IMG/VR virus record: IMGVR_UViG_3300048591_000147
Span: 186,001 to 250,000 of that record
Length of the DNA stretch: 64,000 bases
Strand: one strand, 5' to 3'
How positions within the stretch are numbered: the first letter of the stretch is position 1; each line of letters begins with the position of its first letter. Made by a program: the position numbers and the translations under genes. The notes under the pieces are model-generated. The model had not been told where the DNA came from. It did no database searches and saw nothing but the letters and a program-made list of their open reading frames with translations. Below, piece by piece: positions 675 through 56,471 of the stretch.

Positions 675-1415
675 ATGAGATTCAGTAAATTTCTAACAGA
701 GAAGGAAGAGGCGAATAATTTGTCTGCAAACGTGCTTATTATAATGCACCGGATATTCGCCGCAGTAGAACAAACACACATAGAGAAAAGTGACGGCATG
801 TGTGAGTTCAATATTGGTCAAGCCATAAAAGATAAAGATCTAAAATCGCTGAACATCGCCATAAAGAAAGGTCCAGCACCATCTGCAAAGTTTGCTGTAA
901 AAAGTGACGGAGATGACTATTATATTGTTATTGAGACTCCGAAATACGAAGAAAATCTAGAAAGGGAAGATATAATCGCGATTTTGGAAAGCGCTTCATT
1001 AAAAACTCCGCTACATGATGCAATAACACACTTCTTAAAATATGCAAGAGATGAATTTGATGAGAAGAACGTACCATCACACCACGAACAGAAAACAGAC
1101 GCTAACCAGAATGTTGAGCAAAAATATGATGCGCTAATTAAGACCGTAAAGAGTAGATTAGAAGATCATCATTCAGCGGCTGCCGAAATAGACAGACAAT
1201 CGAAACAGACGTCTAATGCCTTTAAGCAAGACAGTTTCAAAATGGCGTTGGAAAAATTGAAAGAAGAAACTCATGGAAAGGATTTTAAAGGATTCTTATC
1301 AATAGTTAATAAGTTACCAGAAGGTGGATTCATTAAAGAGTTGGAAGGTGACCTTAAGAAAAAGATCTTGAGTAGATTAGAAGACTACTACGAGCATTAT
1401 TTAAACAAGCAATAA
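675..1415 (+). CDS. Hypothetical protein, candidate internal head protein
   Basis: 246-aa ORF; ATAAATA at 644-650; N-terminus MRFSKFLTE resembles the T4 capsid-targeting sequence. Confidence 0.6.
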   Translation: MRFSKFLTEKEEANNLSANVLIIMHRIFAAVEQTHIEKSDGMCEFNIGQAIKDKDLKSLNIAIKKGPAPSAKFAVKSDGDDYYIVIETPKYEENLEREDIIAILESASLKTPLHDAITHFLKYARDEFDEKNVPSHHEQKTDANQNVEQKYDALIKTVKSRLEDHHSAAAEIDRQSKQTSNAFKQDSFKMALEKLKEETHGKDFKGFLSIVNKLPEGGFIKELEGDLKKKILSRLEDYYEHYLNKQ

Positions 1416-1442
1416 CGTCATAATTTTCATATGACAGACAAC

Positions 1443-1470
1443 AAAAAAGCTGGGTTTCCCCAGCTTTTTT
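1443..1470. terminator. Bidirectional intrinsic terminator
   Basis: AAAAAAGCTGGG-tttc-CCCAGCTTTTTT between convergent genes. Confidence 0.9.
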
Positions 1471-1494
1471 ATTTGTCTCTATTTCACTCAACGA

Positions 1495-3666
1495 TTAGTT
1501 GAAAGAGCTTCCAGTACGTGAAGTACCAATATTCGCGCCAGTATTAACCACACGAACTTTCACGTAGATGAATTCTATCGCCTTCACAGGTTTAATCGCG
1601 ATATCAACGTGTAACTCGTTGTTATCAATTGTGAAAGGTGTGTTGTTATCTGTGTCAATCAACACCGCGAAGTCATATAACGCTCTACGACCTATCAAAG
1701 TACCTAAGAATCCATCGCATGCAGCCTTGACAAGATCCCATGTGATTCTATCATTTGGTTCGAACAAGTATGCGAACAACGCTTTTCTTAACTGTCTCTT
1801 GATGAATTTGGTCAAACGAACCACATTGATTCTGTCTAATGCAGAGAATGCACCATACGTAGTTTTCTGACCCATGACCAAAATTCCTCGACCCGGAATA
1901 AATGAAATTGGGTTGATATTTTTTGGAAACTCATATAGATCATCTCGTGTTCCAGTATCTAGATATTCTGATACGAAAGTTGTTGGACCACCAAGTGTTC
2001 CAGAAGCATAACCAATGTCTGACAAGTGAGAACATGTTCCACGTTGTACACCAGCAGGAGCATACCATTCAGCCTGAACATCATCATTATACGCAAACAC
2101 ACGTAATGCTGTTGATCCGGCAGATGTCATGATGTTATTACCATCTATATTAGATGAAATGCCATGACCGTAGTGATATGCAATGTGTTGTTTTGTCTTT
2201 CTGGCTGGAGTTACCGCCCATTGTGCGATTGAGTTAGGACCAGTAGGTGGTTTGTCAAATGGGGTTTCACCTATGATGAAAACTTCATTGTTCATTGCAT
2301 CGTCTAATCTTAACAACTCATCGGCCAACTCTGGATAACCCGGAGCCAATGTTATGTTGTATTCGATCCATTCGTTTCTTGAACCATTGAATGGGTTGTT
2401 TACTGCTGCCTGAAGCGCTGTAACAATGGTTGCTCTACGAGCAGCATCGTTATCACCAAGCTTGGAGAATTCAACGAATTCTTTGGTGTTGTCAAACATG
2501 TCAGCCGCTGCTAGTAACAAACCTTCAGCGTCATCGGCAGAGAATTCAGTTGTTTCAGGGGTGCCTGAAGTCCAATCATCGATTATGCTGTATAGACCAT
2601 CATAGTCGCCTATGATATCAAAGTCGTTATAATCATCAGTGTAAATCGCCAATGAATCTGCGCCATAACCCGGTTTTGGATCTTCGATGCGGTCGAATAA
2701 GTTTAGTGATGCGAATAATGGTAATGTGCTTGACTGTCCGTCAGATACTATTGTCACTTCTGAAGTTGCACCTTCATATGTACTTGTGATCTTTATAGCA
2801 CCTTGAATTATTTCAGCTACTGCGTAACCTTCCATCACCACATTCATAGCATCAACCAAATCACCAAAGGTGATTATGTCTTCGCCGTTAAACTCAAATG
2901 ATGCGGTAAATGATGCTGCACTGTTGTCATCTTCTGGATCACCAACTATGTCTATAATAGCGCCATAAACTTGACCATCTTCGTAACCAGTAACGTCACC
3001 AGCCACCACAAATCCAGCGTAAGTTTCTGTTAGAACACGCTGATATGCTGGTTGAGGGTTTGTGTGATCAAGTAAGAAAGCATCACGGAATTCTGGTTTC
3101 TGGAACGAATATGATGAGAATACATCAGTTAATGCCTGATCTATCAATTCTTTCAATGTTGCTGCATCTACCTGTGTCTTGTAATCTGCCACGTCTGCTG
3201 GGAAAAAGTTGTTAACAGTGTTGTAAGTATCCAACCAATCCTGTACCAATTCATTCAAATAGTCGGCAGCCGCCTGAATCTTCTTAACCCATAAGGTCTT
3301 GATATCTGCTAAATCATCATTTAAATTTACATTAGCTCTGATAACATATGCTCTATTACCAATTTCTAAGAATTTATTTAGAGCGTCTAGACCATATTCG
3401 TTTCTAGCGTCACCGTGGTGAGGCTGACCAGTTGCTGATCTATGGAATTTTGGAACGCCATAAAGTTCTAGAGACTGTTTTAAGCTTGTAACAGTTCTCA
3501 TAACATTGTTTTCGTATGTTCCCACCGCTGGAGAAACACCATCAACTTGGAATTTTTCATCCGCTGTTGCAATAAAAATTAACGGTACGCAAGCGGCGCG
3601 CCCCGGAATATAGAACGATTCGTCAATGATTTGTACGTCAACGCCCGGACTGATTAAAGTTCCCAT
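1495..3666 (-). CDS. Tail sheath protein (gp18-like)
   Basis: N-terminal LISPGVDVQIIDES; C-terminal WYAPAGVQRG, INPI, GQKT, SALDRINVVRL, LFEPND, IKPVKAIEFIY. Confidence 0.95.
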   Translation of the reverse strand: MGTLISPGVDVQIIDESFYIPGRAACVPLIFIATADEKFQVDGVSPAVGTYENNVMRTVTSLKQSLELYGVPKFHRSATGQPHHGDARNEYGLDALNKFLEIGNRAYVIRANVNLNDDLADIKTLWVKKIQAAADYLNELVQDWLDTYNTVNNFFPADVADYKTQVDAATLKELIDQALTDVFSSYSFQKPEFRDAFLLDHTNPQPAYQRVLTETYAGFVVAGDVTGYEDGQVYGAIIDIVGDPEDDNSAASFTASFEFNGEDIITFGDLVDAMNVVMEGYAVAEIIQGAIKITSTYEGATSEVTIVSDGQSSTLPLFASLNLFDRIEDPKPGYGADSLAIYTDDYNDFDIIGDYDGLYSIIDDWTSGTPETTEFSADDAEGLLLAAADMFDNTKEFVEFSKLGDNDAARRATIVTALQAAVNNPFNGSRNEWIEYNITLAPGYPELADELLRLDDAMNNEVFIIGETPFDKPPTGPNSIAQWAVTPARKTKQHIAYHYGHGISSNIDGNNIMTSAGSTALRVFAYNDDVQAEWYAPAGVQRGTCSHLSDIGYASGTLGGPTTFVSEYLDTGTRDDLYEFPKNINPISFIPGRGILVMGQKTTYGAFSALDRINVVRLTKFIKRQLRKALFAYLFEPNDRITWDLVKAACDGFLGTLIGRRALYDFAVLIDTDNNTPFTIDNNELHVDIAIKPVKAIEFIYVKVRVVNTGANIGTSRTGSSFN

Positions 3667-5283: not shown

Positions 5284-8200
5284 TTATAGTTCCACTGCTG
5301 CTGGGCACACACCATCTACAAAGGTTGTAGTTCTTAGGACACCATTAGAAGGTGCTCTAACATTTTGGGTCGCTTGTAGCGCCACCCAAGAGGTTTTAAA
5401 GATGTCCGCATGTTCTCTTTTCAATGACATTGCCGCATGCAAAAATTCAAAGAATATCGCATTCACCTCATCTATCGTAAAATTGTTATAAATGTCATAC
5501 ATCATTAAAACTAATGATGCTTGATCTTCCATATTATAATTCTTAATGAATTCATTTATATCAACGTTTCTAAAATTGAACGTATTATTAACAAGTAATG
5601 AATTGATAATATATAATCCAAGATCCTTATCGATAAATGTCTGTTCTTCACCTAACCCAAATCGCGTGTCTGAGTTGTATAGTTGGTCATATATGAATCT
5701 ATTAATAGTAGGTATCACAACTTCTTGATTACCCTCTTCCGCGTCTGGATTCAAGTATACGACACCATTGACCACTCTCTTACCAATCAAAGACTCTGTT
5801 ATTCTATCCCACAAGAATGCGTCAATCTTGAATAATTGCTTCTCTCTGAATAGTTTCCACTCCCAATGCACATTTTTCAAATATAGTGGTGTGTATATTG
5901 AGTTTGGTCCCGGTAAATTATCACGTAGTGTGAAGTCACGCATAAATCTCAGAGAATATCTATCATCGTCTTTTACCGTGTTCTCTAAACCTTTCACAAC
6001 TAATTGGGTGTATCGATGTGGTAATTCGTATGCATCTTCATCAAACACTGTACCATAGATCAAACCATAACCAAATTCTGGCGTTCGTGGACCCTGTAAA
6101 ATCATATAAGGCGCAGGAATATTTCTTAACTGTTTAGCAGCCTCTTGCATATTCATATATGCGTCGCCAGTTATCGCGATCTTATTTGTTTTGTTTTTCA
6201 CCCAGAAATAGTACACGCTGAATTCTGCTCTAGAAACTGGGTCAATCTTGGTGGTAACTGAGTATGGGAACACCTTTTTATATTCTACACCAGCTTCTAA
6301 TTGCGCCATGGTTGGAGTCACAGCAACTTTTATCAAAGTTAGCATGTCTTGTGGTCTTGGTTTAGCTATTTGCCCGTCCAATTCAACACCATAACAGAAT
6401 TCACTTATGGTATCTGTATCTAGGTCCAGAGTGCCAGCGTACTTACCATTGATATAAGCGTCAACGACACCGTCAATTGCTGGGTTTGTCGGAACTGTAA
6501 ACTGCTGCACTAGCGCGACTATAAAGTCTTCTGTTACATCGACATGTTCTACCCATACTGGATCTTCGTCTGGGTCAGTCTCAGTATTCTTATATAGTTT
6601 ATAGTACGCTGAACCAGATCTTTTCTGATCCTGTAATAAATTGGTATTCTTGGCATCTTTCAGTACAGTCGCGTCCCATTCTGTTGGTGGCACCAATGAC
6701 TCTGTCCATTGATATAAATCTATGCTACCCCAATCGGCCATACTACCCCATTTTAGGATTCTTTCGTTTATATCTGTAAAGATTCTAGCATCATAGTATG
6801 GTATGTAAACCATTTTTGTTGTATCTGACCATACCGTAGATACTTTATCAGCGAGCCATGTAGTCTCAGTCTGAGATACATCCTCATAATTATACACCGC
6901 AACATCACTGTCATTTCTGATATCAATAATAGAATTGGCTACATGATAATGCTGTCCCAACGCTGGATGCCATAATTGGACTCTAGTCACAACGGTCCCC
7001 GCGCGCTTATCAATCAGCGTGGCAGGATTTTGCGCATCATAGTTATATGAAAGAATATAAACGGATAATCCATCTATAGTTCTTGGGTCTGCACCAGCAA
7101 TAGAGTTCATTTGTATCACTCTACCATTTATAAATGAATACTCATACCCTTCAGATAGCTGAACAGTTTCCTCTTTTACAGAATCCCAATATGATATGAT
7201 TACTTTGTCAGCGTGTACTGGTAGTCTCAATACTAATTTGTTATTGATAGACGCAATATCATTTTCAACATTATTCATTATGTTGATCACCTGACTGTCG
7301 AAATAGAATGAGGACTTAGGCTTCAGACTGAATAGCTGATCAGGTTGGTTCCACCATCTCGACAAATCGGTTAAACGCACTGGTTCGAACGTTTCATCTA
7401 ATACCGTATTGTCTGGAGTAACGAACTCAACACGCATTTCTTTTGTTGATACATCTCGCGTAAACAACTTCAATTCTGGATATATCTTCTCTTTATTATC
7501 ACCAAAACAACCAAGTCTATATGCCCAGAATTCATCCACATGTGCATCATCAAATACAGGCTGATTGACAAATGCTTTAATAGCATTATTTGTGCCCTTG
7601 TTCTGTATCATTCCTCTCCAGAACGCAAACTGTGTTTTGTCATTTATTTGTAGATCGTCCATATAATCTCTAGGACCATCATAACCGATAGACTTTCTAG
7701 CGCGTTCAATAATAGGTTTATTTTCTACTATCTTGTAAGTGTCATACAGATATCTGATATTCTCTACACTGTTTTCGATGTTATCAACCAATTTACCATC
7801 TTGTAGTACATAACCGCCAAGGTTTGGACGCAATGTGTACTTGTCTGATTTACTGAACTCGACATAGAATCTAGGAGTTCTAATCCCTAAGAAAGAATCG
7901 AAAATCATTGATCCATCTACTGAGATGTTATTGAATGTTAAGATATGTTCGTATGCATCTAGTAATAATTTGAAACCGGACATATTGACGATTTTCTGAT
8001 TTATCACCACACTGACTTGTTCAGTACCGTTGGTATTTTGTCTCTTAACATACTCAAAGTACTTTGCATTACTGTTTATAATATCTTTCAGCAATGAAAT
8101 CTTAGTTTCTTTATCTTGACGATACATCAATATGGAATCAATGTTTAATATATTTCCATTCTGATCATATATCTTAGGTGTTTCTGTAAAGTAGTAATCG

Positions 8201-17564: not shown

Positions 17565-17572
17565 TTTATTAT

Positions 17573-17950: not shown

Positions 17951-17976
17951 GAGAGACTCTTGTAGTTAATTTATAT

Positions 17977-18306: not shown

Positions 18307-18320
18307 TTATATTCCTTTAA

Positions 18321-24700: not shown

Positions 24701-25948
24701 ATGCTAACAAAATTTTATAGACTAAATGAAGCTCTAGAAGGTGCTGATGCCACTGCTATCAACAACCAAATCATAGATGCAATAAAGGCTACTGGATATT
24801 CTGGTACTCCATCTCAGCAATGGATTGCAGGCGCTATCAGAGCGCTTCAGAAATCTACCAGCGAACATAAACATCTTGTTAGTATGTTACACAAATACGA
24901 ACGTCTTCCACCAGACGAGCAGTTAGAATTTGGTAAAAAATTTAGTGTGCCAACCGCAAAGAATATCAGAGCGTTGTATAAAGTATTAGCAGATAACAAC
25001 TTAATTGATGCCGTAAAGAAAGAGACTGGTGAAATAGTATATAATTGGCCATCCAGTGAAGATGGTAATGATTTCAAAGGTAAGACTGACGTACTTAGCG
25101 AAATATCACGTTTAGTGGTAGCATCAAACGCTGAAAAGAATAAGAATAATGATGTCTTCGACAAGACTAAAAAAGAGATTCGTAGAGCGGATCAGTTAGT
25201 CAATGATGACGAAGAGGCTAAATTACGCGCCAACGGATATGGGAAGATATTTGACGTATTGCAATCCATGTCAGAAAGTGATATTAAGGGTGTTAGCTAC
25301 ATCACAAAAGTGCGCGAATATGCTAAGAAACATAAAACAAATTATTCACAGATACTAAAACAGCAGTTAGAGCGCGGTGGTAAAATTACTACCAGCTTAC
25401 ATAATTTCGGTTTTATCAACGATGACGGTAAACTTAACAACGAACTGATATCTTCGTTCTTTAAACTATTTAATAGTGACCCTCGTCTAGTGTTCAAGAT
25501 AAACAAAAATGCAAAAACATTATATGATATGTTAGAGAAAGCATCTGCTGATCAAGCATATGTCGATAATGACACTGCCAGAGAGTTGCAAGGTTCTGGC
25601 GAGGAACAACAAGCTACCCAATTGATGTCCCAGCTAACGCAGAAAGATATTGATGCTATAACAAGAAATCAAGTGTTCCCAGAAAGATTCAAGAAAATGG
25701 GACTATTGGATTCTCGTGGTAGAACTAATAAAGTGTATGCAGCTTTACAGGTAATGTTAAAGCGAAAAGCCAGTAGTTTGGGTGATGTTGTACAAGGAAC
25801 GAAGGATAGAACTGGTAGAGATGAAAAAACTGGTAGACTAGAACCGTCGCATCCAACTAATACGGGTGACACACATGCTAGGAAGCTTGATGACATCAAT
25901 AGACGTATTCAACAATTCTCACAGTTTAACAAGTCAAAACAGGCTTGA
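24701..25948 (+). CDS. Hypothetical late protein, candidate internal head protein
   Basis: 415-aa ORF; ATAAATA at 24672; N-terminus MLTKFYRLNE. Confidence 0.55.
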   Translation: MLTKFYRLNEALEGADATAINNQIIDAIKATGYSGTPSQQWIAGAIRALQKSTSEHKHLVSMLHKYERLPPDEQLEFGKKFSVPTAKNIRALYKVLADNNLIDAVKKETGEIVYNWPSSEDGNDFKGKTDVLSEISRLVVASNAEKNKNNDVFDKTKKEIRRADQLVNDDEEAKLRANGYGKIFDVLQSMSESDIKGVSYITKVREYAKKHKTNYSQILKQQLERGGKITTSLHNFGFINDDGKLNNELISSFFKLFNSDPRLVFKINKNAKTLYDMLEKASADQAYVDNDTARELQGSGEEQQATQLMSQLTQKDIDAITRNQVFPERFKKMGLLDSRGRTNKVYAALQVMLKRKASSLGDVVQGTKDRTGRDEKTGRLEPSHPTNTGDTHARKLDDINRRIQQFSQFNKSKQA

Positions 25949-30350: not shown

Positions 30351-31393
30351 TACTTTAATCCCTCGTATATTTTAACTAACAACTCTTTATCCATTTTCTC
30401 GGAAACGATTTGCATCAGCATTGATTTGATCAATTCGTGTGTAGACTGAGTGTCTAATTGCTCTTCATTTAGTTCTGTATTTTCTAGTACTTCCTGTTTC
30501 TCTTGCGTTTCATTAAAAAACAGTTCTCGTAGCTTATATGATTCTATAAGAATATTACGTAATTCTATGCTTTCTGAGTAACTGATCTCAACGTCAACAG
30601 TGCATCGCACTCTTGCACCAGATAATAGGATGTCACCATCCTCTAACGCATCACTGAGTTTGCATGTGATGTACTTAGGACAGTCTGGCCAATCAATGAA
30701 CTCCAGTGCATTTGTTTCAAAGTTGTATATGGCCATGCCCCTAGCGTTGTCATTAGCATCAGAAAAATCCATGGGGAATGTATTACCAATATAATGTATA
30801 TTGTCTGCTTCCTGTCTTTTATGGAAATGACCAGAGAAAACACGTTTTTGTTTTTTGAAAAATTTCTTATGGTCCAGACCGTGAGTCGAGATAGAATGCT
30901 CGCCTGTTAATATAAACCCTGCCAAATCCAAGTGCCCTAGTGCGACAGGAACTTTTTCATGTTTCAGCAACTCGGCATTTTCATTCTCATAGATGTATGG
31001 AATCAATAACACCGAATTGTGTACGTTTGTCAGTACTGTAATGTCGTTGATGACATTGAAGTTTGATAAGTGCTCAAATATTTCAGTGTTGAATACATCT
31101 CTATTGTTTCTATTATGTAGATCATGGTTGCCGACAATGAAATATATTGGAAGACCAAGACTGTTTAATTTCTTGGCGCATCTGTTTGAGTATTGTAATG
31201 TCAGCCCATTGATGGATGATCGATGCTCGTACCAATCACCCAAGAAATATATGTGATCTATTGATTTGTCTTTCTTGACCTGTTCACAGAACCAATCTAC
31301 ATAGTTCACACAGTCGGTGTTGTGCTCTTCACTGTTGTTGCGCCTCCCCAAGTGAATATCCGTAAACATCGCGGCTTTTTTAAGTTTATTCAT
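30350..31393 (-). CDS. Recombination endonuclease nuclease subunit (gp47/SbcD/Mre11)
   Basis: DIHLG, LGD, GNHD, SGHFH. Confidence 0.95.
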   Translation of the reverse strand: MNKLKKAAMFTDIHLGRRNNSEEHNTDCVNYVDWFCEQVKKDKSIDHIYFLGDWYEHRSSINGLTLQYSNRCAKKLNSLGLPIYFIVGNHDLHNRNNRDVFNTEIFEHLSNFNVINDITVLTNVHNSVLLIPYIYENENAELLKHEKVPVALGHLDLAGFILTGEHSISTHGLDHKKFFKKQKRVFSGHFHKRQEADNIHYIGNTFPMDFSDANDNARGMAIYNFETNALEFIDWPDCPKYITCKLSDALEDGDILLSGARVRCTVDVEISYSESIELRNILIESYKLRELFFNETQEKQEVLENTELNEEQLDTQSTHELIKSMLMQIVSEKMDKELLVKIYEGLK

Positions 31394-31991
31394 TTACTTC
31401 CTGTTCCTTCTCTACGTCTGGTTCAATTATATCTTCATTGACACCTTCAGGCAACACGATGAATAACTTATCATCCAATTCATCGACTGCATCAGTATTG
31501 GGATCGTTGAAAAATAATACATCAGATTCGGTGTCACTTGAATCTTCGAACCCTACAATAAAGTTATCTCTACCGACTCTTTCCATCTCTAATAATTCCA
31601 TGAATGAAGGATTCAATCCTAAATCTTTCTTCACGGCTTTCTTGGTGTCTTGTGCCTTTTTCTCTGAGTTACCATATTGGTAAAAGGCGTGTCGTAGAAT
31701 TTGCGTAAAGTACGCGAACGGATTTTTTGATTTTTCTGGGTTGAAAGACTTCCATACTTTGACGACAGTTAAAAGGCCGAATGCCTGCATGTCTTCTTCG
31801 TGTGAGAACACGTTGGAATAGTCTGGGTGTTTCGCGTATCGTTTACATAAAACCATTATCATCTTACCAAGTTCATTCGTCATTCTATTTTGCGCATGAC
31901 TCAGTTCGATCTCTTTCATCAGGTCCGCATTGTTTAAATAGTTCTTCGGTTTCTTCTTTTTCACTATCTCTGTCATATTGATTAGCTCCAT
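31386..31991 (-). CDS. Late-transcription sigma factor (gp55-like)
   Basis: NYLNN, FNPEKSKNPFAYFTQI...AF; adjacent to gp47/46 as in T4. Confidence 0.9.
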   Translation of the reverse strand: MELINMTEIVKKKKPKNYLNNADLMKEIELSHAQNRMTNELGKMIMVLCKRYAKHPDYSNVFSHEEDMQAFGLLTVVKVWKSFNPEKSKNPFAYFTQILRHAFYQYGNSEKKAQDTKKAVKKDLGLNPSFMELLEMERVGRDNFIVGFEDSSDTESDVLFFNDPNTDAVDELDDKLFIVLPEGVNEDIIEPDVEKEQEVNE

Positions 31992-37542: not shown

Positions 37543-37600
37543 TATTTCAAAAAAATATGATATGCATAAATATTAATAATATTTCTTAGTGAGGATAAAC

Positions 37601-38032
37601 ATGAGATACTTAAAATTATTTTTAGAACATTTTCTAGAAGGCGATGAAAAGGGTGCAAAGAAAGCGCTTCGAAATGCTTTATTTGAAAAGCAGTCAAAAC
37701 TAATCAATGAAACTGATGAAGAAGATGACGATAAATCCGAAAAGGAAGAATCCGATTCAAAGGATGATAAGCCATCTAAGGGTGATAAGAAAGATGACGA
37801 TAAATCCGATAAGAAAGACAAGAAGTCGGATAAGAAAGATGACGATAAAGACGATGATAAAGACGATGACAAAGATGACGACAAGTCTGACAAGAAAGAT
37901 AAGAAATCTGACGATAAAGACGATGACGACAAAAAGTCTGACGATAAGAAAGAAGATGACGACGATGATGATAAGTCAGACGACGACAAACCTTCCAAAT
38001 TCGAATTCTTCAAAAAGAAGAAAAAGAAATAA
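37601..38032 (+). CDS. Lys/Asp low-complexity protein (prohead core gp67-like position)
   Basis: GAGG SD before ATG 37601; ~95 residues of K/D/S repeats; directly after the portal. Confidence 0.7.
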   Translation: MRYLKLFLEHFLEGDEKGAKKALRNALFEKQSKLINETDEEDDDKSEKEESDSKDDKPSKGDKKDDDKSDKKDKKSDKKDDDKDDDKDDDKDDDKSDKKDKKSDDKDDDDKKSDDKKEDDDDDDKSDDDKPSKFEFFKKKKKK

Positions 38033-38211
38033 TGAAACACTCTTTTATACAGTATATCAATGAGCAGTTCGTCACCATGGCCGATGTAGTCGATAAGGAC
38101 TGTGACGGCTGTTCAGAGAAAGATAGTGCAAAAAAGAGAAAGAAATTTAAGAAGCAATTCCATAATGCGAATCTACTTAAATATATACAACAACATAACG
38201 TAGCACAATAA
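38032..38211 (+). CDS. 59-aa late protein (not in ORF track)
   Basis: ATG overlaps upstream TAA; MKHSFIQYINEQ...CDGC...HNVAQ*. Confidence 0.65.
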   Translation: MKHSFIQYINEQFVTMADVVDKDCDGCSEKDSAKKRKKFKKQFHNANLLKYIQQHNVAQ

Positions 38212-38222: not shown

Positions 38223-38609
38223 ATGAACAACGAACATTTAAACAAATTTATAGATGGTGTAATTAATAGTAACGATGACGATGTATCCGCATCAGCACAT
38301 CAATTCGCCTTAGAAAAAGTTAAGTCCATTGTAGCAGAGTTTAAAAGCGCTAAATTAAACAAATTACATGAATCGCTACAGGCAGTATTACTAGAATATA
38401 ATGAGAAGACTGGTTATAACATAGAAATTAGCCATTCTGGTGAGGTTATTATAAATGGTACGGTAGTTGGTAAAGTCCAATACGATATGAACGATTTTGA
38501 CTCTGGTGTTAGCTTCGTAGCCGCTGACGGTCGTTTTTCAAGAGAATTTACGACAGTGGAAGAACTAACAGCTTGGCTTGGACGTTCATATGGGGGTAAA
38601 GGTAAATGA
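38223..38609 (+). CDS. Hypothetical prohead-associated protein
   Basis: GGAG SD; overlaps the gp21 start. Confidence 0.7.
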   Translation: MNNEHLNKFIDGVINSNDDDVSASAHQFALEKVKSIVAEFKSAKLNKLHESLQAVLLEYNEKTGYNIEISHSGEVIINGTVVGKVQYDMNDFDSGVSFVAADGRFSREFTTVEELTAWLGRSYGGKGK

Positions 38610-39232
38610 AGAATCAATTATTGATAGAAGAATATTCTAATAACGAGTCTGTTATAGTATGTGAGGCTAGTGAAGATTCTAAGAATTTATTCTTAAAAGG
38701 CATCTTCATGCAGGCAGACGTACAGAACAGAAACAAAAGAATATACCCTTTACATGAAATGTGTCAGGCGGTAGCGTCAGCTAACAGAATGATCGCTGAA
38801 AATGGCGGTATATTCGGAGAGGCAGACCATCCAAATACATTGAATATTAATATCGACCGAATATCACATGTCATAACAGAATTGTATATGGATGGGAGCA
38901 ACGCGATAGGAAAGGCTAAAATTTTAGACACACCAATGGGCAAGATCGTGAAAGAATTGACTAAAACTGGTGTTAAAATTGGCGTTTCCAGTAGAGGAAC
39001 TGGTCAGGTAAATGAAGAGGGATTAGTTAGTGGGTTTAATATTGTATCAGTGGATGTAGTTGTAAACCCTAGTGCAATTGGTGCTACTCCGACTTCCATA
39101 TATGAAAATCTACAATCATATAAAAAGAATGAGCGAATAATTACATTGGCGGAATCATTACAGACTGATAAGGCGGCACAAAAGTATTTCACTAGAGAAA
39201 TTGATGCGTTCTTGAAATCGTTGCTTAAGTAA
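38606..39232 (+). CDS. Prohead protease (gp21-like)
   Basis: GIFMQAD..NRN.RIYP, GEADHP, SHVI, TPMG, GVSSRGTG, D.V..PS. Confidence 0.95.
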   Translation: MKNQLLIEEYSNNESVIVCEASEDSKNLFLKGIFMQADVQNRNKRIYPLHEMCQAVASANRMIAENGGIFGEADHPNTLNINIDRISHVITELYMDGSNAIGKAKILDTPMGKIVKELTKTGVKIGVSSRGTGQVNEEGLVSGFNIVSVDVVVNPSAIGATPTSIYENLQSYKKNERIITLAESLQTDKAAQKYFTREIDAFLKSLLK

Positions 39233-39667: not shown

Positions 39668-39707
39668 TTATGTTACTCCATGTTAGGTTAATGATATTTA
39701 TAACTAA

Positions 39708-40987: not shown

Positions 40988-41410
40988 TTACGCCATCCCA
41001 CGTTGTGGAGGCTGTTGAACTGGACGCTGTTGTTGTTGTTGTGGCTGTACTGGAGGTTGACCCTGACCAGCATCATCTGCACCGGCGCTATCTTCCAACT
41101 TTTTCTGAATAAAATTGAACAATGAGCGAATCTTGTTTAAGTTGCCCATAATCTTTCTACGGTGTAAAACTCTGCTGTCACCCGGTGGTAGTTTATTGGT
41201 CAAACCTAATCCGCGTCTAGCCGCGTCTAATCGTTTTGCTAATTGTTCCATAGCGGTATCAAGATCTGGGTCTAAATCGTCTGTGACACCTTCTACAAGC
41301 GCTAGATTATAGCTGAATTGCATTGTGTGAAATGCCTCGTCAAATTTATTAAGTTGCTTTTCTAAAGCGTCCATGATACCATTATGTATTGTTTCTTGGA
41401 TAAATTTCAT
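40988..41410 (-). CDS. Hypothetical late protein with Gln/Pro-rich tail
   Basis: AGGAG SD; ATAAATA on minus strand at 41444-41450. Confidence 0.7.
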   Translation of the reverse strand: MKFIQETIHNGIMDALEKQLNKFDEAFHTMQFSYNLALVEGVTDDLDPDLDTAMEQLAKRLDAARRGLGLTNKLPPGDSRVLHRRKIMGNLNKIRSLFNFIQKKLEDSAGADDAGQGQPPVQPQQQQQRPVQQPPQRGMA

Positions 41411-41476
41411 TACAGTAAACTCCTAAGTTTAAGTTATTTACTATATTTATCAAAAATAAAATTGCAGGAATATAAA

Positions 41477-44983: not shown

Positions 44984-45016
44984 TTGCACTACGGCAACAC
45001 TAAATAGATTTAATAT

Positions 45017-45108
45017 GGATAGGTGGGGGAGAGGTTTAACCCATCCTGTTGCTAACTGGGCGAGTCGCCTAAAAAACGGCTCCGTGGGTTCGAATCCCAC
45101 CCTATCCG
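45017..45108 (+). tRNA. tRNA-Ser(GCT), no encoded CCA
   Basis: GGATAGG/CCTATCC acceptor, TT-GCT-AA loop, long variable arm, GGTTCGAATCC. Confidence 0.9.
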
Positions 45109-45114
45109 AAAATT

Positions 45115-45190
45115 GGTAATGTAGCTTAACTGGTAGAGCAGAAGTTTCATAAACTTTTAGATGTTGGTTCGATTCCAATCATTACCACCA
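45115..45190 (+). tRNA. tRNA with CAT anticodon (Met or lysidine Ile2)
   Basis: GGTAATG/CATTACC acceptor, TT-CAT-AA loop, GGTTCGATTCC, ACCA end. Confidence 0.9.
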
Positions 45191-45197
45191 AATTTTG

Positions 45198-45494
45198 ATG
45201 ATAAAAATGAACGATAATTCTTTTGCATATTTCAATTTAACACTTGAGTTGTTTCGGGCAAGACGTAATCCAAATTACACGGAAGAACGACTAGAACAAA
45301 TTGAAAATTTTTTGTGTGATGAAATGGATGTCGCATGGTATCAGACACCTGATGAAGATGATTTTAATATACGCTCATTAGTTCAATATCTGATTGCACA
45401 AGATAATCCGAATGTTTTTATAAATAAAGAAAAGCAATGGATAGTTGGCAGAGAGGACTATAGCACCAACTTGGAAAGTTGGAGATCGCCCTAA
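45198..45494 (+). CDS. Hypothetical protein within the tRNA cluster (3' end overlaps a tRNA)
   Basis: Protein-like ORF; start uncertain, no clear SD. Confidence 0.45.
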   Translation: MIKMNDNSFAYFNLTLELFRARRNPNYTEERLEQIENFLCDEMDVAWYQTPDEDDFNIRSLVQYLIAQDNPNVFINKEKQWIVGREDYSTNLESWRSP

Positions 45495-45530
45495 ACAAGT
45501 GGTCCGTAGGTTCGAATCCTACACTATCCG
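45439..45530 (+). tRNA. tRNA-Ser(GGA), no encoded CCA
   Basis: GGATAGT/ACTATCC acceptor, CCAAC-TT-GGA-AA-GTTGG, long variable arm, GGTTCGAATCC. Confidence 0.9.
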
Positions 45531-45537
45531 AAAATAT

Positions 45538-45612
45538 GGCGATGAAGCCCAATGGTTAGGCGTCTGACTCTGAATCAGATTTTACTGGGTTCGATTCCTA
45601 GCATCGCTGCCA
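45538..45612 (+). tRNA. tRNA-Gln(CTG)
   Basis: GGCGATG/CATCGCT acceptor, TCTGA-CT-CTG-AA-TCAGA, GGTTCGATTCC, GCCA end. Confidence 0.9.
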
Positions 45613-53527: not shown

Positions 53528-54931
53528 ATGAATGAAAATCAAATATTAGGTGAAGGCTGGCAGGAAACTAAGAGTGCCCTTCTTGAAGGTCTATCACAAT
53601 CAAAAAGAGAAATCACAGAAAAGGTTCTAGATAATACACGTTTGTATTTAACTGGTGGATTAACTGAAACTGCTGCTGCTGGTGCGATTGTTGCAAATGA
53701 CATTGCAGGCTTCCGTAAGACTCTATTACCGTTGATTCGCCGTATTATCCCCGGTACTATTGCTACAGAAATCGTCGGTGTTCAGCCAATGTCTGGCCCA
53801 GTAGCTCAAGTGTTTTCAATGAAATACACTTATGGCGAAGATATGACTCATGATCCATCTCGTTCTCAGTTCGGCGGATTTAATATCTCTGCTGGCGACG
53901 AAGCGTTTGGTAATGCTAGCCCAATTCGTCAGTTTTATGCTGGTAATACTGGTGCTGCACAAGATGCAGGTGCTTCTGGTATAGGTTACACTGGTGCACA
54001 ACCAACTGATATCGATGCAGCTACTGCTGACGGTGCAGGTTGGGGAGCAACATTAGATTCAACTACTTATACTTCCGGTACTACATTGTACGGTGAAGCT
54101 GTTGGTGGTAGTCTGTACGGTGGTTCCGGTTCCTTCCTAGAAGGTTCTGCTGGTCGTAAGATGGGCCTACAGTTGAAATCTCAGGCTGTTGAAGCCAAGA
54201 GCCGTAAACTACAGGCTGGTTGGACAATCGAAGCGATGCAGGATGCGAGAAACATGCATGGTATCAATATCGAAAATGAAATGACTAAAGCCTTATCCGC
54301 TGAAATCGTTCAGGAAATCGACGCTGAAATCATCAATGATCTATTAGCATTGGCTGGTACTTTGAGAACTTTCGATTTCGCAGCAACTTCAGCACCTAAC
54401 TATGCTCCGGCATTCGTTGGTGATCGTTTCTCACACGTTGGTGTAAGAATCGGTGAAGTAGCGAACGTTATCGCACGTAAGACTCGTAGAGGTCCGGGTA
54501 ATTTCGTGGTTGTTTCACCAATGATCGTGTCTGTTCTACAGACTGCTGCTAAGGCTGTATTCGCACCAGCGGTTGAAGGTTCATTCAAGGGTCCAAACAA
54601 CAACATGTTGGTTGGTACTTTAAACGGTTCTATCAAGGTTTATTCATACTTGTGGAATCAGGCTGAACCGGGTTCTTCAGACCCAGCAGGATCTGACAAG
54701 ATTCTAGTTGGTTTGAAATCAGGTAATGGTGAAACTGATGCAGGTTATTTCTACTGCCCATATGTGCCTGTAATGAGCAGCGGAGTTGTTGTTAACCCTG
54801 TTACAATGCAGCCAGTGGTTGGTTTGATGACTCGCTACGGTAAAGCAACATTCACTGATCCTACCATTTCACTAGGTAACTCATCAGATTACTACGGACG
54901 TGTTAACGTTGTTAACCTAGAGTTCGTGTAA
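53528..54931 (+). CDS. Major capsid protein (gp23-like)
   Basis: GVQPMSGP, VEAKSRKLQAGWTIEAMQD, EIDAEII, TRRGPGN, DAGYFYCPYVP, MTRYG. Confidence 0.97.
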   Translation: MNENQILGEGWQETKSALLEGLSQSKREITEKVLDNTRLYLTGGLTETAAAGAIVANDIAGFRKTLLPLIRRIIPGTIATEIVGVQPMSGPVAQVFSMKYTYGEDMTHDPSRSQFGGFNISAGDEAFGNASPIRQFYAGNTGAAQDAGASGIGYTGAQPTDIDAATADGAGWGATLDSTTYTSGTTLYGEAVGGSLYGGSGSFLEGSAGRKMGLQLKSQAVEAKSRKLQAGWTIEAMQDARNMHGINIENEMTKALSAEIVQEIDAEIINDLLALAGTLRTFDFAATSAPNYAPAFVGDRFSHVGVRIGEVANVIARKTRRGPGNFVVVSPMIVSVLQTAAKAVFAPAVEGSFKGPNNNMLVGTLNGSIKVYSYLWNQAEPGSSDPAGSDKILVGLKSGNGETDAGYFYCPYVPVMSSGVVVNPVTMQPVVGLMTRYGKATFTDPTISLGNSSDYYGRVNVVNLEFV

Positions 54932-54983: not shown

Positions 54984-55028
54984 CATTTGTGGAAATAAAA
55001 ATATAAATATGTAAAAAGACCTAATTAA

Positions 55029-55664
55029 ATGAAAAGATTTATTCAATATCTCCAAGAAGCACCATTACCAGAAGATTGGGATGCTGCGATATATTCAGAA
55101 AGAGTCCCATTCGCTCAACGTATAAGATACGCTAAAGCAAAAGCCAAACAACTTGGTGCAGGTTCATCAAGAGTCGCATTCGAGATTCCATACCAAGGCA
55201 GACGAACGGTATTAAAAATTGCCAAGAATAATAAAGGCATGGCACAAAATGCTGAAGAGGCATCAGCGTTATCCGATTGGTATCTGAAGGGGCTAAATCT
55301 AACAATCCCATTAATAGATTATGACGAACAAACTGACAGTCCAACATGGATTCATACGGAGTTTGCTACCAAGGCTAAAAATTCTGATTTTAAGAAAGCT
55401 ACTGGTGCACCACTATATGATTTTGTTATGTACTGTGTTAGACAAAGCGGAAGAGAGCGTAGCGGTAGTAATAAACCAGAAGATTATGGGATAGATCCAG
55501 ATAGCGAATTGGTCCAGAACTTTACAGATTACGTAGGTAACTATACACATCATCCGTGGGTGGAATATACTAATTTAAGAAATTGGGGGATTTATCAGGG
55601 TAATCCAGTAATAATCGATATTGGGCTAACTCAAGATATATGGAATGATCATTATAAACGTTGA
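55029..55664 (+). CDS. Protein-kinase-fold late protein
   Basis: LGAGSSRVAF Gly loop, VLKIA, QNAEE, NWG, VIIDIGL; TATAAATA at 55002. Confidence 0.65.
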   Translation: MKRFIQYLQEAPLPEDWDAAIYSERVPFAQRIRYAKAKAKQLGAGSSRVAFEIPYQGRRTVLKIAKNNKGMAQNAEEASALSDWYLKGLNLTIPLIDYDEQTDSPTWIHTEFATKAKNSDFKKATGAPLYDFVMYCVRQSGRERSGSNKPEDYGIDPDSELVQNFTDYVGNYTHHPWVEYTNLRNWGIYQGNPVIIDIGLTQDIWNDHYKR

Positions 55665-55701
55665 TCAATAAATACTACTATAAGAACAACGAGGAATATT
55701 A

Positions 55702-56130
55702 ATGAGTTTCATAGTACTAGAGCGGTTTGCATACACACCATTTGGCACATTCGGTAGATTGGTCTACAACGACTTCAGAGCGTTTTCTGTTGAACTGCCA
55801 TGGGCCGATAACAAACCTAGAGTATCATGCATCCCAGAGGGCAAATACACGGTTAAGTGGTACGATTCACCAACGTTTGGCAAGACGTTAGCAGTGATTG
55901 GTGACACAGTTAGTTTATTTCCTAATAATACACATCAACGGTCAGCAATTCTATTCCACAAAGCAAACACAATGGATGACTTATTGGGATGTATAGGATT
56001 GGGTAAATCATTAGGATACATAAATGGTAAGTGGGCAGTTACGAGTAGTACGCCAGCCATTACAGAATTTTTAAATCTGAAAATACCTGATAACACCACA
56101 TTATTCATTAAACAATTTTTAATCTCATAA
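55702..56130 (+). CDS. DUF5675-family protein (L,D-peptidase-like; candidate endolysin)
   Basis: T.G.L, ELPW.DN...SCIPEG.Y, ILFHKAN....LGCI.LG. Confidence 0.8.
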   Translation: MSFIVLERFAYTPFGTFGRLVYNDFRAFSVELPWADNKPRVSCIPEGKYTVKWYDSPTFGKTLAVIGDTVSLFPNNTHQRSAILFHKANTMDDLLGCIGLGKSLGYINGKWAVTSSTPAITEFLNLKIPDNTTLFIKQFLIS

Positions 56131-56147
56131 ATAATTATATAATTACT

Positions 56148-56471
56148 ATGGAATCTAAAATGCGTTTATCATTCTCGGAATATGTAGAGTCAAAAAACAT
56201 TTTAAAAATGGCAGTGGAAGACGCTCCGAAACATATGCAAGTGTTTAACGTCACCAAATATTGCAAGATACCAGTGCATGAAGATATCAAATCTAATTCC
56301 AAAGCATATGTTGGATTAAAGCCCAAAGACTCTGTCCAAGTGATATGGGAAACACACGAACAACAAATGATCGTAAGGTATATAATAATCAACGAAGAAT
56401 ACAATTATTTCCCCACATGGACGAATAAAAAGTTTTGCAACTGGTTGACCCTCAACTGTAAAGTCATATAA
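56148..56471 (+). CDS. Hypothetical late protein
   Basis: ATAAATA at 56127; MRLSFSEYVE near the N-terminus. Confidence 0.65.
   Translation: MESKMRLSFSEYVESKNILKMAVEDAPKHMQVFNVTKYCKIPVHEDIKSNSKAYVGLKPKDSVQVIWETHEQQMIVRYIIINEEYNYFPTWTNKKFCNWLTLNCKVI

What the first reader, a model, noticed from the sequence alone, without database searches (positions are those of the whole stretch)
675..56471. Dispersed family of late proteins with a T4-like capsid-targeting N-terminus
Seen: unrelated late genes begin MRFSKFLTE (675), MLTKFYRLNE (24701), MRYLKLFLE (37601), MKHSFIQYINE (38032), MKIQHLVNE (39667, -), MKFIQE (41410, -), MKRFIQYLQE (55029) and MRLSFSEYVE (56160). Known: T4 internal proteins carry a ~10-residue MKTYQEFIAE-type leader that directs them into the prohead and is cut after Glu by gp21. 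Inference: up to eight uncharacterised proteins are packaged and may be ejected as early host-takeover or anti-defence cargo.
Basis: partly seen in the sequence, partly recalled or inferred. Interest (0 to 1): 0.65.

Follow-up and report, generated by a model that had tools for sequence, protein, structure and literature searches.

The report
Capsid-address tags on late phage proteins
In this uncultured 315-kb jumbo phage with a T4-type head, a set of otherwise unrelated late proteins begin with a 6-11-residue tag ending in hydrophobic-x-Glu, the cut site of the phage's own T4-type head protease, so most are probably loaded into the young capsid and trimmed there as in phage T4: a known mechanism in a new lineage.

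Summary
All eight N-termini are present as quoted. The window belongs to a 314,956-bp IMG/VR jumbo phage related to Xanthomonas phage XacN1. It carries a T4 gp21-family prohead protease, a gp23-type capsid protein, a gp55-type late sigma factor and a T4-like late promoter word (ATAAATA).

The loose motif is no commoner at N-termini than inside proteins. In late genes of this phage and five relatives, though, hydrophobic-x-Glu ends at residues 8-10 in 24.8% of late gene families against 7.2% of other families (p=3.5e-13). Control positions show no difference. The capsid protein keeps an invariant L-x-E|TAAAGA site where T4 gp23 is cut. The protease and the gp67-like core protein carry the same kind of leader.

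Family alignments support the tag for 55029 (a kinase-like fold) and 41410. Fewer homologs support it for 24701, 39667 and 675. Genes 37601 and 38032 look like head-core proteins (T4 gp67/gp68 position), not cargo. Gene 56160 fails: its Glu is not conserved.

Cleavage and packaging are well-supported inferences. Ejection and anti-defence roles are untested. This is a new member of the known T4 capsid-targeting/propeptide system.

The parts
675..1415 (+). Late gene (246 aa), unknown function. Leader MRFSKFLTE|K, with Phe3, Phe6, Leu7 and Glu9 at P7/P4/P3/P1. ATAAATA lies at 644-650.
   Evidence: Orthologs keep the site: MKRFASFLLE|K (G001) and MRSFKQYILNE|Y (G003); it is lost in G002. Close homologs are identical in the leader. 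No family match. The gene is divergent from the tail sheath gene at 1495-3666. Moderately supported.
24701..25948 (+). Late gene (415 aa, net charge +11), unknown function. Leader MLTKFYRLNE|A. ATAAATA lies at 24672-24678.
   Evidence: Five further homologs keep M-[LI]-x-x-F-[YF]-x-[LI]-x-E followed by A or S (MLTKFYRIDE|A, MLKRFYRIDE|A, MLKKFYRIDE|A, MIKNFFRLDE|A, MITNFYLIE|S). The next ~15 residues and most of the protein diverge, down to 25% identity. Well supported.
37601..38032 (+). Prohead-core protein analogous to T4 gp67 (143 aa). Leader MRYLKLFLE|H, further hydrophobic-x-E sites at residues 13, 29 and 37, then a long Asp/Lys/Ser low-complexity tail. ATAAATA lies at 37566-37572.
   Evidence: It sits between portal (35800-37542) and protease, as gp67 does in T4. 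T4 gp67 has the same layout: MEGLIE|A, a helical ~45 aa...FLIE|G, then an acidic tail. The G001 ortholog reads MKYLNLFVE|H. No BLAST similarity to gp67.
38032..38211 (+). Small basic protein (59 aa, net charge +4) with leader MKHSFIQYINE|Q. It has no promoter word of its own and its start codon overlaps the stop codon of 37601. It occupies the gp68-like position.
   Evidence: The G001 homolog reads ...IKFSTFLE|QKYVG. Weak PHROG 19794 match, function unknown.
38606..39232 (+). Prohead maturation protease of the T4 gp21 family (Peptidase S77). Its own N-terminus is MKNQLLIE|E.
   Evidence: PF03420 86 bits; PHROG 207, E=1.4e-60; N-terminus. T4 gp21 begins MNEPQLLIE|T, the 'LIE-9' site discussed in PMC9026906.
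39299..39667 (-). Late gene (122 aa, acidic), unknown function. Leader MKIQHLVNE|S. ATAAATA lies at 39695-39701 on the minus strand.
   Evidence: Orthologs read MKIQHLLNE|V, MRIEILLNE|T and MRIDTLLNE|T. MKIQN-type leaders recur on late proteins of about the same size in G002 and G003; orthology was not tested. Supported.
40988..41410 (-). Late gene (140 aa), member of a widespread phage family with a basic ...AARRGLGL.NKL... core. Short leader MKFIQE|T. ATAAATA lies at 41444-41450 on the minus strand.
   Evidence: There are 171 cluster representatives. Of 123 with 90-200 aa, 96 have hydrophobic-x-E ending at residues 5-12, although the leaders differ in sequence and length. No profile similarity to T4 gp68. 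Well supported.
52547..53485 (+). Scaffold (gp22-like) coiled-coil acidic protein (312 aa) with 26 hydrophobic-x-E sites. The C-terminus ends ...ELQKLAGIVN.
   Evidence: Position directly upstream of the capsid gene; composition and sites; PHROG 10922; C-terminal motif.
53528..54931 (+). Major capsid protein (gp23 family). Predicted maturation cut after Glu47 (GGLTE|TAAAGA). It also has MNENQILGE|G at residue 9.
   Evidence: PF07068 326 bits. In an alignment of 83 non-identical N-terminal regions, the site column was read from the printed rows (not counted) as [LIVMF]-x-E followed by [TSAE]AA.G, at the position of the T4 gp23 cut.
55029..55664 (+). Late gene (211 aa) with a minimal protein-kinase-like fold. 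Leader MKRFIQYLQE|APLPEDWD. ATAAATA lies at 55003-55009.
   Evidence: The family has 469 homologs. Leu8 and Glu10 are at least 90% conserved, while the rest of the leader varies in sequence and length. The AF2 model with an alignment has pLDDT 92.9, but 52 for residues 1-10. The top 50 listed Foldseek matches in PDB are all kinases or aminoglycoside phosphotransferases. K63, E77 and D197 are invariant; D179 and N185 are at least 90% conserved. The XacN1 homolog ORF170 (MKQVRLSQFLSE|APLPDDWD) lies behind a GATAAATAC word. Well supported as a leader.
56160..56471 (+). Late gene (103 aa) of a family conserved near the capsid gene. MRLSFSEYVE|S is probably part of the fold, not a cleavable leader.
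   Evidence: In 47 distinct orthologs Glu10 is kept in only 19 (Asp 13, Asn 5, Gln 4) and Glu7 in 29. Phe5, Tyr8, Lys12 and Leu15 are nearly invariant. In T4, Asp at P1 blocks processing.
31386..31976 (-). Late sigma factor (T4 gp55 family). This supports reading ATAAATA as a T4-type late promoter.
   Evidence: PHROG 234, E=2e-25. The ATAAATA-containing 8-mers are about 9-13-fold enriched in the 70 nt upstream of genes.

Best explanation
Most of these N-termini are short propeptides that work like the T4 capsid-targeting sequences and head-protein propeptides.

Proposed mechanism:
1. The proteins are made late from gp55-type promoters.
2. An amphipathic leader of 6-11 residues has hydrophobic residues at P7, P4 and P3 and Glu at P1. 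It lets the protein join the scaffold/core of the assembling prohead.
3. The phage's gp21-family protease then cuts after the Glu. The same step trims the capsid protein after Glu47 and degrades the scaffold and the gp67-like core protein.
4. The mature proteins are left inside the head with the DNA.

Shown here:
- The protease, capsid, scaffold and late-sigma genes are present.
- The leaders exist.
- They show late-gene-specific and position-specific enrichment.
- The cut motif is conserved in the capsid protein and in the two large cargo families (55029, 41410), and in the few homologs found for three smaller ones.
- The kinase-like protein's leader has low model confidence, as expected for a segment outside the fold.

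Inferred from T4:
- The leader targets the protein into the head.
- The protease cuts it.
- The cargo stays in the head.

Speculative: the cargo is ejected and acts early in the host.

Of the eight, 24701, 39667, 41410, 55029 and (less surely) 675 are candidate cargo. Genes 37601 and 38032 are core components. Gene 56160 probably does not belong.
For: - Protease PF03420 at 38606-39232.
- Capsid site L-x-E|TAAAGA at the T4 gp23 cut position across 83 relatives.
- Protease N-terminus MKNQLLIE matches T4 MNEPQLLIE. T4 gp22, gp24, gp67, gp68, Alt and IPII/III all show the same N-terminal pattern under the same scan.
- Hydrophobic-x-E ends at residues 8-10 in 24.8% of late families against 7.2% of others (p=3.5e-13); control windows are flat.
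- The full T4-like pattern (hydrophobic at P7, P4, P3; Glu at P1) ends at residues 8-11 in 29 late genes, where 4.9 are expected.
- P1' is Ala/Ser/Thr in 41% against 19% at internal sites.
- 55029 family: Leu8 and Glu10 conserved, the rest of the leader variable, leader pLDDT 52 against about 97 for the domain.
- 41410 family: 96/123 representatives carry an N-terminal site.
- 24701 family: the leader is the best-conserved N-terminal segment at 25-50% overall identity.
- Late promoter word and gp55 homolog.
- T4 biology from PMC9026906 and PMC12373910.
Against: - There are no protein-level data. Nothing shows that any of these proteins is in a virion or is cut.
- The motif is short, so about 30% of individual late-gene hits are expected by chance.
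- The leaders share a pattern, not a near-identical sequence as T4 IPI-III do.
- The cargo candidates are mostly neutral or acidic proteins of 12-47 kDa, unlike the small basic T4 IPs.
- A conserved L-x-E next to a conserved PLPDDWD block in the 55029 family could be structural.
- Some flagged late genes are baseplate or tail proteins that a head protease should not meet, for example 22844 MTPEQFKE.
- Leader-bearing late genes do not evolve faster than other late genes.
- The complex prediction gave no verdict.
Confidence: 0.6

Rival explanations
1. Chance and composition. In an AT-rich genome many proteins start M-K/R followed by hydrophobic residues and a Glu. On this view the eight are an eye-picked subset with no shared function.
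For: The loose motif is equally frequent at N-termini and at internal offsets: 83/544 against 81/539. The [LIVFY][NQ]E sub-pattern is close to my hand-estimated expectation. T4 itself shows many non-substrate proteins matching the loose pattern. 56160 fails the conservation test.
Against: The peak is position-specific at residues 8-10, and only in late genes and families (p=3e-10 and 3.5e-13), with flat control windows. The full pattern is six-fold above expectation. There is a P1' Ala/Ser/Thr bias. Leu-x-Glu is conserved within variable leaders in families of 120 and 123 sequences.
Confidence: 0.1
2. The leader is a real, selected N-terminal amphipathic helix of late proteins, but it is not a protease substrate or capsid address. 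It could be a docking element for a chaperone (the phage encodes GroES), an oligomerisation helix, or a feature tied to translation of short-leader late mRNAs.
For: The hydrophobic periodicity (P7, P4, P3) fits a helix. A GroES gene sits among the head genes at 40672-40956. The late 5' leaders are very short, with the promoter word 25-40 nt from the ATG. The 56160 family shows that a conserved N-terminal helix of this look can be part of a fold.
Against: This view does not explain several findings. The invariant residues are the P3 hydrophobic and the P1 Glu, which are the T4 gp21 determinants. The proven T4 substrates' counterparts here (protease and gp67-like protein, and the capsid protein at Glu47) carry such sites. 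P1' favours small residues. The 55029 leader is modelled with low confidence.
Confidence: 0.15
3. The sites are cut by the head protease, but the proteins are assembly factors or scaffold-like core parts that are degraded and expelled. On this view they are not stable cargo and are not ejected into the host.
For: 37601 has four sites and a gp67-like layout. 38032 sits in the gp68 position. A 489-aa late protein at genome 182647-184116 is coiled-coil, acidic and Gln-rich, like a scaffold. In T4, gp22, gp67 and gp68 fragments mostly leave the head.
Against: 55029 is a compact, enzyme-like domain with a single N-terminal site. 24701 has a conserved single leader site. T4 Alt and IPs with the same layout stay in the head and are ejected.
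Confidence: 0.15

Closest known systems
T4 internal proteins IPI, IPII, IPIII and their capsid-targeting sequence (MKTYQEFIAE)
   Same: A short N-terminal leader sits on otherwise unrelated late proteins. Hydrophobic residues are at P7, P4 and P3 and Glu is at P1, ending near residue 10. A gp21-family protease is encoded in the same genome. Some genes lie away from the head cluster, embedded in non-late regions with their own late promoters.
   Different: The leaders here share only a pattern (commonly M-K-[ILV]-x-x-[ILV]-[LIV]-x-E), not a near-identical decapeptide. The proteins are larger and mostly not basic. There is no homology to any T4 IP. No evidence of packaging or ejection.
T4 Alt, gp24, gp21, gp22, gp67 and gp68 N-terminal propeptides cut at L/I-x-E
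   Same: The T4 head and core proteins start with such sites: MELITELFDE, MAKINELLRE, MNEPQLLIE, MLKEQLIAE, MEGLIE, MLLIPE. Here the protease (MKNQLLIE) and the gp67-like 37601 do so too. The scaffold's first site is at residue 16 and the gp24-like vertex protein's at residue 16. The order portal, small core genes, protease is kept. An enzyme (Alt in T4; a kinase-like protein here) carries the tag.
   Different: The head cluster is split: about 13 kb of other genes lie between protease and scaffold. 37601 and 41410 show no detectable sequence or profile similarity to gp67 or gp68. The capsid propeptide is about 47 residues instead of 65.
phiKZ / SPN3US / 201phi2-1 giant-phage head maturation (gp175/gp245 proteases, inner-body and ejection proteins)
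   Same: These are jumbo phages whose diverged gp21-like protease cuts many head proteins after Glu in a three-residue motif. Many processed proteins are ejected.
   Different: Those phages use S/A/G-x-E, with long multi-site propeptides and a different, more diverged protease. Here the protease scores above the Pfam gp21 threshold and the motif is the T4-type hydrophobic-x-E with very short leaders.

Membership tests
T4-type capsid-targeting / gp21-processed head proteins | The genome encodes a gp21-family (Peptidase S77/U9) prohead protease | tested here: met
   PF03420 86 bits, above the 27-bit cut-off, at window 38606-39232. PHROG 207 head maturation protease, E=1.4e-60.
T4-type capsid-targeting / gp21-processed head proteins | Protease specificity is hydrophobic(L/I)-x-Glu, seen at the capsid protein maturation site | tested here: met
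   By sequence only. In the alignment of 83 capsid N-terminal regions the site column reads [LIVMF]-x-E then [TSAE]AA.G, as inspected in the printed rows. G000 has LTE47|TAAAGA, at the place of the T4 gp23 cut. Biochemical specificity was not testable.
T4-type capsid-targeting / gp21-processed head proteins | A 7-19-residue N-terminal leader ending in hydrophobic-x-Glu on mutually unrelated proteins | tested here: met
   The eight N-termini have no mutual similarity. The positional peak at residues 8-10 is in late families only.
T4-type capsid-targeting / gp21-processed head proteins | The leader keeps the T4 targeting positions (residues 4 and 7 = P7, P4) and processing positions (8 and 10 = P3, P1) | tested here: met
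   Met for 675, 37601, 38032, 39667 and 55029. Partly met for 41410. Not met for 24701 (P4 Arg, P7 Lys) or 56160. For the class: 29 observed against 4.9 expected. T4 positions are from PMC9026906.
T4-type capsid-targeting / gp21-processed head proteins | Late expression together with head genes | tested here: met
   By promoter word only. ATAAATA lies 26-40 nt upstream of seven of the eight. A gp55 homolog is present. No transcript data.
T4-type capsid-targeting / gp21-processed head proteins | P1 Glu conserved among orthologs (Asp blocks processing in T4) | tested here: met
   Met for 55029 (at least 90% of 92), 24701 (6/6), 39667 (4/4) and 41410 (96/123). Mostly met for 675 (3/4). Not met for 56160 (19/47).
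T4-type capsid-targeting / gp21-processed head proteins | Protein present in virions with a mature N-terminus starting after the Glu | not testable with these tools
   The XacN1 virion proteome paper gives no per-protein table in the held text.
T4-type capsid-targeting / gp21-processed head proteins | The leader is necessary and sufficient for packaging | not testable with these tools
   This needs leader-reporter fusions in a cultured relative.
T4 internal proteins (IP) in the narrow sense | Small (8-20 kDa), strongly basic, abundant DNA-associated proteins ejected with the DNA; anti-restriction function | tested here: not met
   Size and charge: only 38032 (59 aa, net charge +4) is small and basic. 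The others are 122-415 aa with net charge -10 to +11. Ejection and function were not testable. No homology to T4 IPs.
Protein kinase-like superfamily (for 55029 only) | Bilobal kinase fold with beta-3 Lys, alpha-C Glu, catalytic Asp/Asn and a metal-binding Asp-x-Gly | tested here: met
   AF2 pLDDT 92.9. The top 50 listed Foldseek PDB matches are kinases or APH, with probability 0.99-1.00 but TM only about 0.3-0.44. K63, E77, D197 and G199 are invariant; D179 and N185 are at least 90% conserved. Assigning these residues to the catalytic roles is my reading of the sequence and was not tested. Activity and substrate are unknown. No Pfam match.

The most novel reading that the evidence does not exclude
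XacN1-like jumbo phages may use a degenerate 'M-K-hydrophobic-x-x-hydrophobic-hydrophobic-x-E' address tag to load a dozen or more diverse, lineage-specific proteins per genome into the capsid. A second tag may copy the scaffold's C-terminal K-L-A-G-I motif. The cargo would include a minimal protein kinase and a possible HExxH metalloprotease, delivered with the DNA as first-strike effectors. If so, the tag would be a sequence-only predictor of injected effectors in uncultured giant phages.
Probability: 0.3. Interest if true: 0.7.

Novelty: new member of a known kind. Interest (0 to 1): 0.5.

Why it matters
Proteins that travel inside a phage head reach the host before any phage gene is expressed. 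In T4 they include the inhibitors of type IV restriction (Ip1-3) and the RNA-polymerase modifier Alt.

If the tag is valid here, two things follow:
- A simple N-terminal scan restricted to late genes would nominate such first-strike proteins in uncultured jumbo phages, where almost every gene is of unknown function.
- It would point to an unusual cargo, a 200-residue kinase-like enzyme with hundreds of homologs in environmental phages.

The work also shows that the T4 head-maturation logic has survived in a lineage whose capsid protein aligns with T4-group phage records only in the under-60% identity band. That logic is the protease family, the hydrophobic-x-Glu rule, the roughly 10-residue leaders and a gp67-like core protein.

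Tried and rejected
- Megablast of 12.5 kb of the window against phage records: no match.
- PHROGs, Pfam and NCBIfam on the eight proteins: no informative family. There were only PHROG 4301 and 19794 (unknown function) and sub-threshold hits.
- The same searches for ten leader-bearing proteins outside the window: only an HTH domain in the 89-aa protein at genome 2910.
- One search was a mistyped reference and gave nothing.
- Single-sequence AF2 of 55029: unusable, pLDDT 38. It was repeated with an alignment.
- Complex prediction of protease with 55029: no verdict, score 0.00. This is not evidence either way.
- Profile comparison of the 41410 family with T4 gp68 and BLASTP of 37601 with T4 gp67: no similarity. 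The gp67/gp68 assignment therefore rests on position and layout only.
- XacN1 paper and supplement: the virion proteome is in a figure that is not held, and ORF170 appears only in the gene list.
- Test restricted to families present in at least 3 genomes: too few leader families to be informative, 6 against 5 controls.
- Cross-genome PSSM scan: enriched (15 against 3.8 expected), but confounded because the model learns the initiator Met. It was not used as main evidence.
- Idea that leader genes evolve faster than other late genes: not seen, median identity 45% against 48%.
- T4 as a statistical positive control: the known substrates are recovered, but with only 30 promoter-flagged genes the enrichment is not significant.
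- ESM Atlas on 24701: nothing usable. On the HExxH protein: only weak metallopeptidase-like leads.
- Sequencing-run and read-laying tools were not used, because expression data would not test cleavage.

Full report
WHAT THE WINDOW IS

The window is bases 186001-250000 of a 314,956-bp IMG/VR virus record with direct terminal repeats. No phage record matches it at the DNA level.

Its major capsid protein (window 53528-54931) belongs to the T4 gp23 family: PF07068, 326 bits. It is 59-65% identical to the capsid proteins of Stenotrophomonas phages CM1/RAS14 and Xanthomonas phages XacN1 and Xoo-sp13. It is more distantly related to Rak2-, PA5oct- and Atu_ph07-like jumbo phages.

The window holds a T4-like morphogenesis region:
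- tail sheath, 1495-3666 (-)
- baseplate wedge and hub genes, 14664-23797
- gp46/47-like nuclease and a helicase
- a gp55-type late sigma factor, 31386-31976 (-)
- portal, 35800-37542
- a gp21-family prohead protease, 38606-39232 (PF03420, 86 bits)
- GroES, 40672-40956
- four tRNA genes, 45016-45612
- a scaffold-like protein, 52547-53485
- the capsid gene
- a head-tail adaptor, 57210-60128

THE OBSERVATION

They have no significant similarity to each other. What is shared is a leader, not a protein family.

The word ATAAATA resembles the T4 late promoter TATAAATA. The 8-mers containing it are about 9-13-fold enriched in the 70 nt upstream of genes. It lies 26-40 nt upstream of seven of the eight start codons. 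Gene 38032 directly follows 37601. Together with the gp55 homolog, this supports calling them late genes.

IS IT MORE THAN CHANCE?

The loose pattern (M, 2-8 residues, hydrophobic, any residue, Glu) is not enriched. It occurs in 83 of 544 N-termini and in 81 of 539 windows taken 15 residues further in.

I fetched five complete or near-complete relatives (306-364 kb). I then asked where hydrophobic-x-Glu ends along the protein, separately for genes with and without the late-promoter word.
- Late genes show a sharp peak at residues 8, 9 and 10 (5.3, 6.7 and 5.3%), against about 2.4% at every other position and in non-late genes.
- Summed over residues 8-10: 77/450 late genes against 192/2640 others, p=3e-10.
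- Counting each homology cluster once: 52/210 late families (24.8%) against 133/1841 (7.2%), p=3.5e-13. Windows 5-7, 11-13, 18-20, 28-30 and 38-40 show no difference.
- Two hydrophobics followed by x-Glu, ending exactly at residue 9, occur in 5.3% of late genes against a 0.75% background.
- The residue after the Glu is Ala, Ser or Thr in 41% of cases against 19% at internal sites.
- Hydrophobic residues at P7, P4 and P3 with Glu at P1 is the spacing of Tyr4, Phe7, Ile8 and Glu10 in the T4 sequence MKTYQEFIAE. This full pattern ends at residues 8-11 in 29 late genes, where 4.9 are expected.

The excess is about 37 families over six genomes, or roughly six per genome. By the same numbers about 30% of single hits are chance.

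DOES THE PROTEASE CUT AT SUCH SITES?

This cannot be shown by computation, but three findings point that way.
- In an alignment of 83 non-identical capsid N-terminal regions, every row I inspected shows [LIVMF]-x-Glu followed by [TSAE]-A-A-x-G. G000 has LTE47|TAAAGA, where T4 gp23 is cut.
- The protease itself begins MKNQLLIE. This mirrors T4 gp21 MNEPQLLIE, the 'LIE-9' site discussed in PMC9026906.
- The same scan on the T4 genome recovers the known substrates: IPII/IPIII MKTYQEFIAE|A, gp67 MEGLIE|A, gp68 MLLIPE|T, gp22 MLKEQLIAE|A, gp24 MAKINELLRE|S and Alt MELITELFDE|D.

The T4 rules come from PMC9026906. They are: the L/I-x-E motif, 7-19-residue propeptides, targeting by residues 4 and 7, processing by residues 8 and 10, and Asp at residue 10 blocking the cut.

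THE EIGHT, ONE BY ONE

55029 (211 aa) is the best case.
- It has 469 homologs. In alignments of 92-120 of them the leader varies in sequence and length, yet Leu8 and Glu10 are at least 90% conserved. They are followed by A/T/S/M and an invariant PLPDDWD-type block.
- With that alignment AlphaFold gives pLDDT 92.9 for the domain but 52 for residues 1-10.
- The fold is protein-kinase-like. The top 50 listed Foldseek matches in the PDB are all kinases or aminoglycoside phosphotransferases. Lys63, Glu77 and Asp197 are invariant, and Asp179 and Asn185 are nearly so.
- Its XacN1 homolog (ORF170, MKQVRLSQFLSE|APLPDDWD) sits in a two-gene unit behind a GATAAATAC word, although it is surrounded by metabolic genes on the other strand.

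41410 (140 aa) belongs to a family of 171 cluster representatives. Of 123 with 90-200 residues, 96 have hydrophobic-x-Glu ending at residues 5-12, on leaders as different as MSLLRE, MHNIDNLLLE and MKLSNILKE.

24701 (415 aa) has five further homologs down to 25% identity. All keep M-[LI]-x-x-F-[YF]-x-[LI]-x-E followed by Ala or Ser, while the next residues diverge.

39667 keeps L-[LV]-N-E in all four orthologs found.

675 keeps the site in two of three distant orthologs.

37601 and 38032 lie between portal and protease, where T4 has genes 67 and 68.
- 37601 has the gp67 layout: a leader, a helical 40 residues with further cut sites, then a long Asp/Lys-rich tail. It has no measurable similarity to gp67.
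- 38032 is a 59-residue basic protein.
- These two are better read as prohead-core parts than as cargo.

56160 fails. In 47 distinct orthologs Glu10 is kept in 19 (Asp in 13) and Glu7 in 29. Phe5, Tyr8, Lys12 and Leu15 are almost invariant. That is the signature of a structural helix, not of a cut site.

BEYOND THE WINDOW

The same leaders occur on other late genes of the genome.
- A run of plus-strand genes at 132345-137378 (MLLNE, MKIFDLLNE, MKFTQFLINNMLVE, MKLEHVYNE, MIKFLE) is interleaved with minus-strand genes. Four of the five have their own promoter word, and the 136254 gene overlaps the end of its neighbour. One of them carries an HELAH motif.
- A 489-residue scaffold-like protein lies at 182647-184116 (MSLLKEIIKE|MAAGG). 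It is conserved in three relatives.
- There are also several small proteins.

This scattering of late genes within non-late regions is what T4 does with ipI-III and alt.

MECHANISM AND CONFIDENCE

The best-supported reading is the T4 one. Late synthesis is followed by leader-mediated entry into the scaffold core, a cut after Glu by the gp21-type protease, and retention in the filled head.

I put 0.6 on 'most of these are head-protease-processed prohead proteins'. I put less on the leader being the targeting signal itself. I put about 0.25 on ejection with an early function.

Rivals:
- pure chance, refuted for the class but possible for single genes
- a selected N-terminal helix with another role
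- cut-and-discarded assembly factors

No protein-level evidence exists, and a complex prediction gave no verdict.

COMPARISON AND NOVELTY

The system matches T4 in these respects:
- protease family
- cut rule
- leader length and pattern
- late timing
- gene order at the portal-protease junction

It differs in having degenerate rather than near-identical leaders and larger, non-basic cargo with no homology to T4 IPs. It also has a split head cluster and a shorter capsid propeptide.

CTS-like leaders on variable proteins are already described for T-even phages (PMC9026906, PMC12373910). I found no report for the XacN1-like lineage.

I rate the finding a new member of a known kind, of moderate interest. 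The value lies in the late-gene positional test as a predictor of packaged proteins and in the tagged kinase-like enzyme.

Noticed in passing
window 53450-53485 (scaffold C-terminus) and genome 275667-276575 (locus L241:7667-8575): The scaffold ends ...ELQKLAGIVN. A 302-aa late protein begins MNNLQELQKLAGIDITE, sharing 8 identical residues. The [RK]-L-A-G-[IL] word recurs at scaffold C-termini in G003 and G005. It also occurs at residues 8-13 of this protein's apparent counterparts in G001-G004 (homology confirmed only for G001), and in some 41410-family N-termini. This may be a second, scaffold-mimicking capsid address.
   Followed up: partly
window 55029-55664: The tagged 211-aa protein is a minimal protein-kinase-like fold with a complete set of catalytic-type residues. 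It has hundreds of homologs in environmental phage contigs. In relative G002 it is fused to a GNAT acetyltransferase domain (P0059, 344 aa). Its substrate is unknown.
   Followed up: partly
genome 132345-137378 (locus L238:2345-7378), outside the window: Five plus-strand genes with leader-like N-termini are interleaved with minus-strand genes. Four have their own late-promoter word. The 303-aa one (135346-136257) has an HELAH motif and weak structural resemblance to M48/SprT/YgjP-type metallopeptidases.
   Followed up: partly
genome 182647-184116 (-), locus L239:2647-4116: A 489-aa late protein begins MSLLKEIIKE|MAAGGAIGAG. It has coiled-coil, acidic Gly/Asp/Glu/Met-rich and Gln/Asn-repeat segments. 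The leader is conserved in G001-G003. It may be a second scaffold or internal head protein.
   Followed up: no
window 5284-14604 (-): A single 3106-aa late ORF lies next to the baseplate genes. It was not annotated here.
   Followed up: no
window 32066-35737 (+): A 1223-aa late protein just upstream of the portal gene has an endolysin-like domain at residues 936-1105. It may be a virion-borne cell-wall hydrolase.
   Followed up: no
window 40672-40956 (+) and 45016-45612 (+): A GroES co-chaperonin gene sits among the head genes. A block of four tRNA genes (Ser-GCT, Met, Ser-GGA, Gln) lies between protease and scaffold.
   Followed up: no
genome 23158, 33438, 47537, 96024, 118987 (outside the window): Several genes whose N-termini (M.YT.Y..TN...) resemble those of GIY-YIG homing endonucleases carry the ATAAATA word about 30 nt upstream. 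This rests on resemblance from memory; no family search was run. The late-promoter word is thus not confined to structural genes.
   Followed up: no
T4 record AF158101, 18966-19130 (-), locus L244: T4 gene 61.1 (54 aa) begins MKTFKEFIKE|D, much like the IP leaders, although it lies in an early region. It was seen in the positive-control scan.
   Followed up: no
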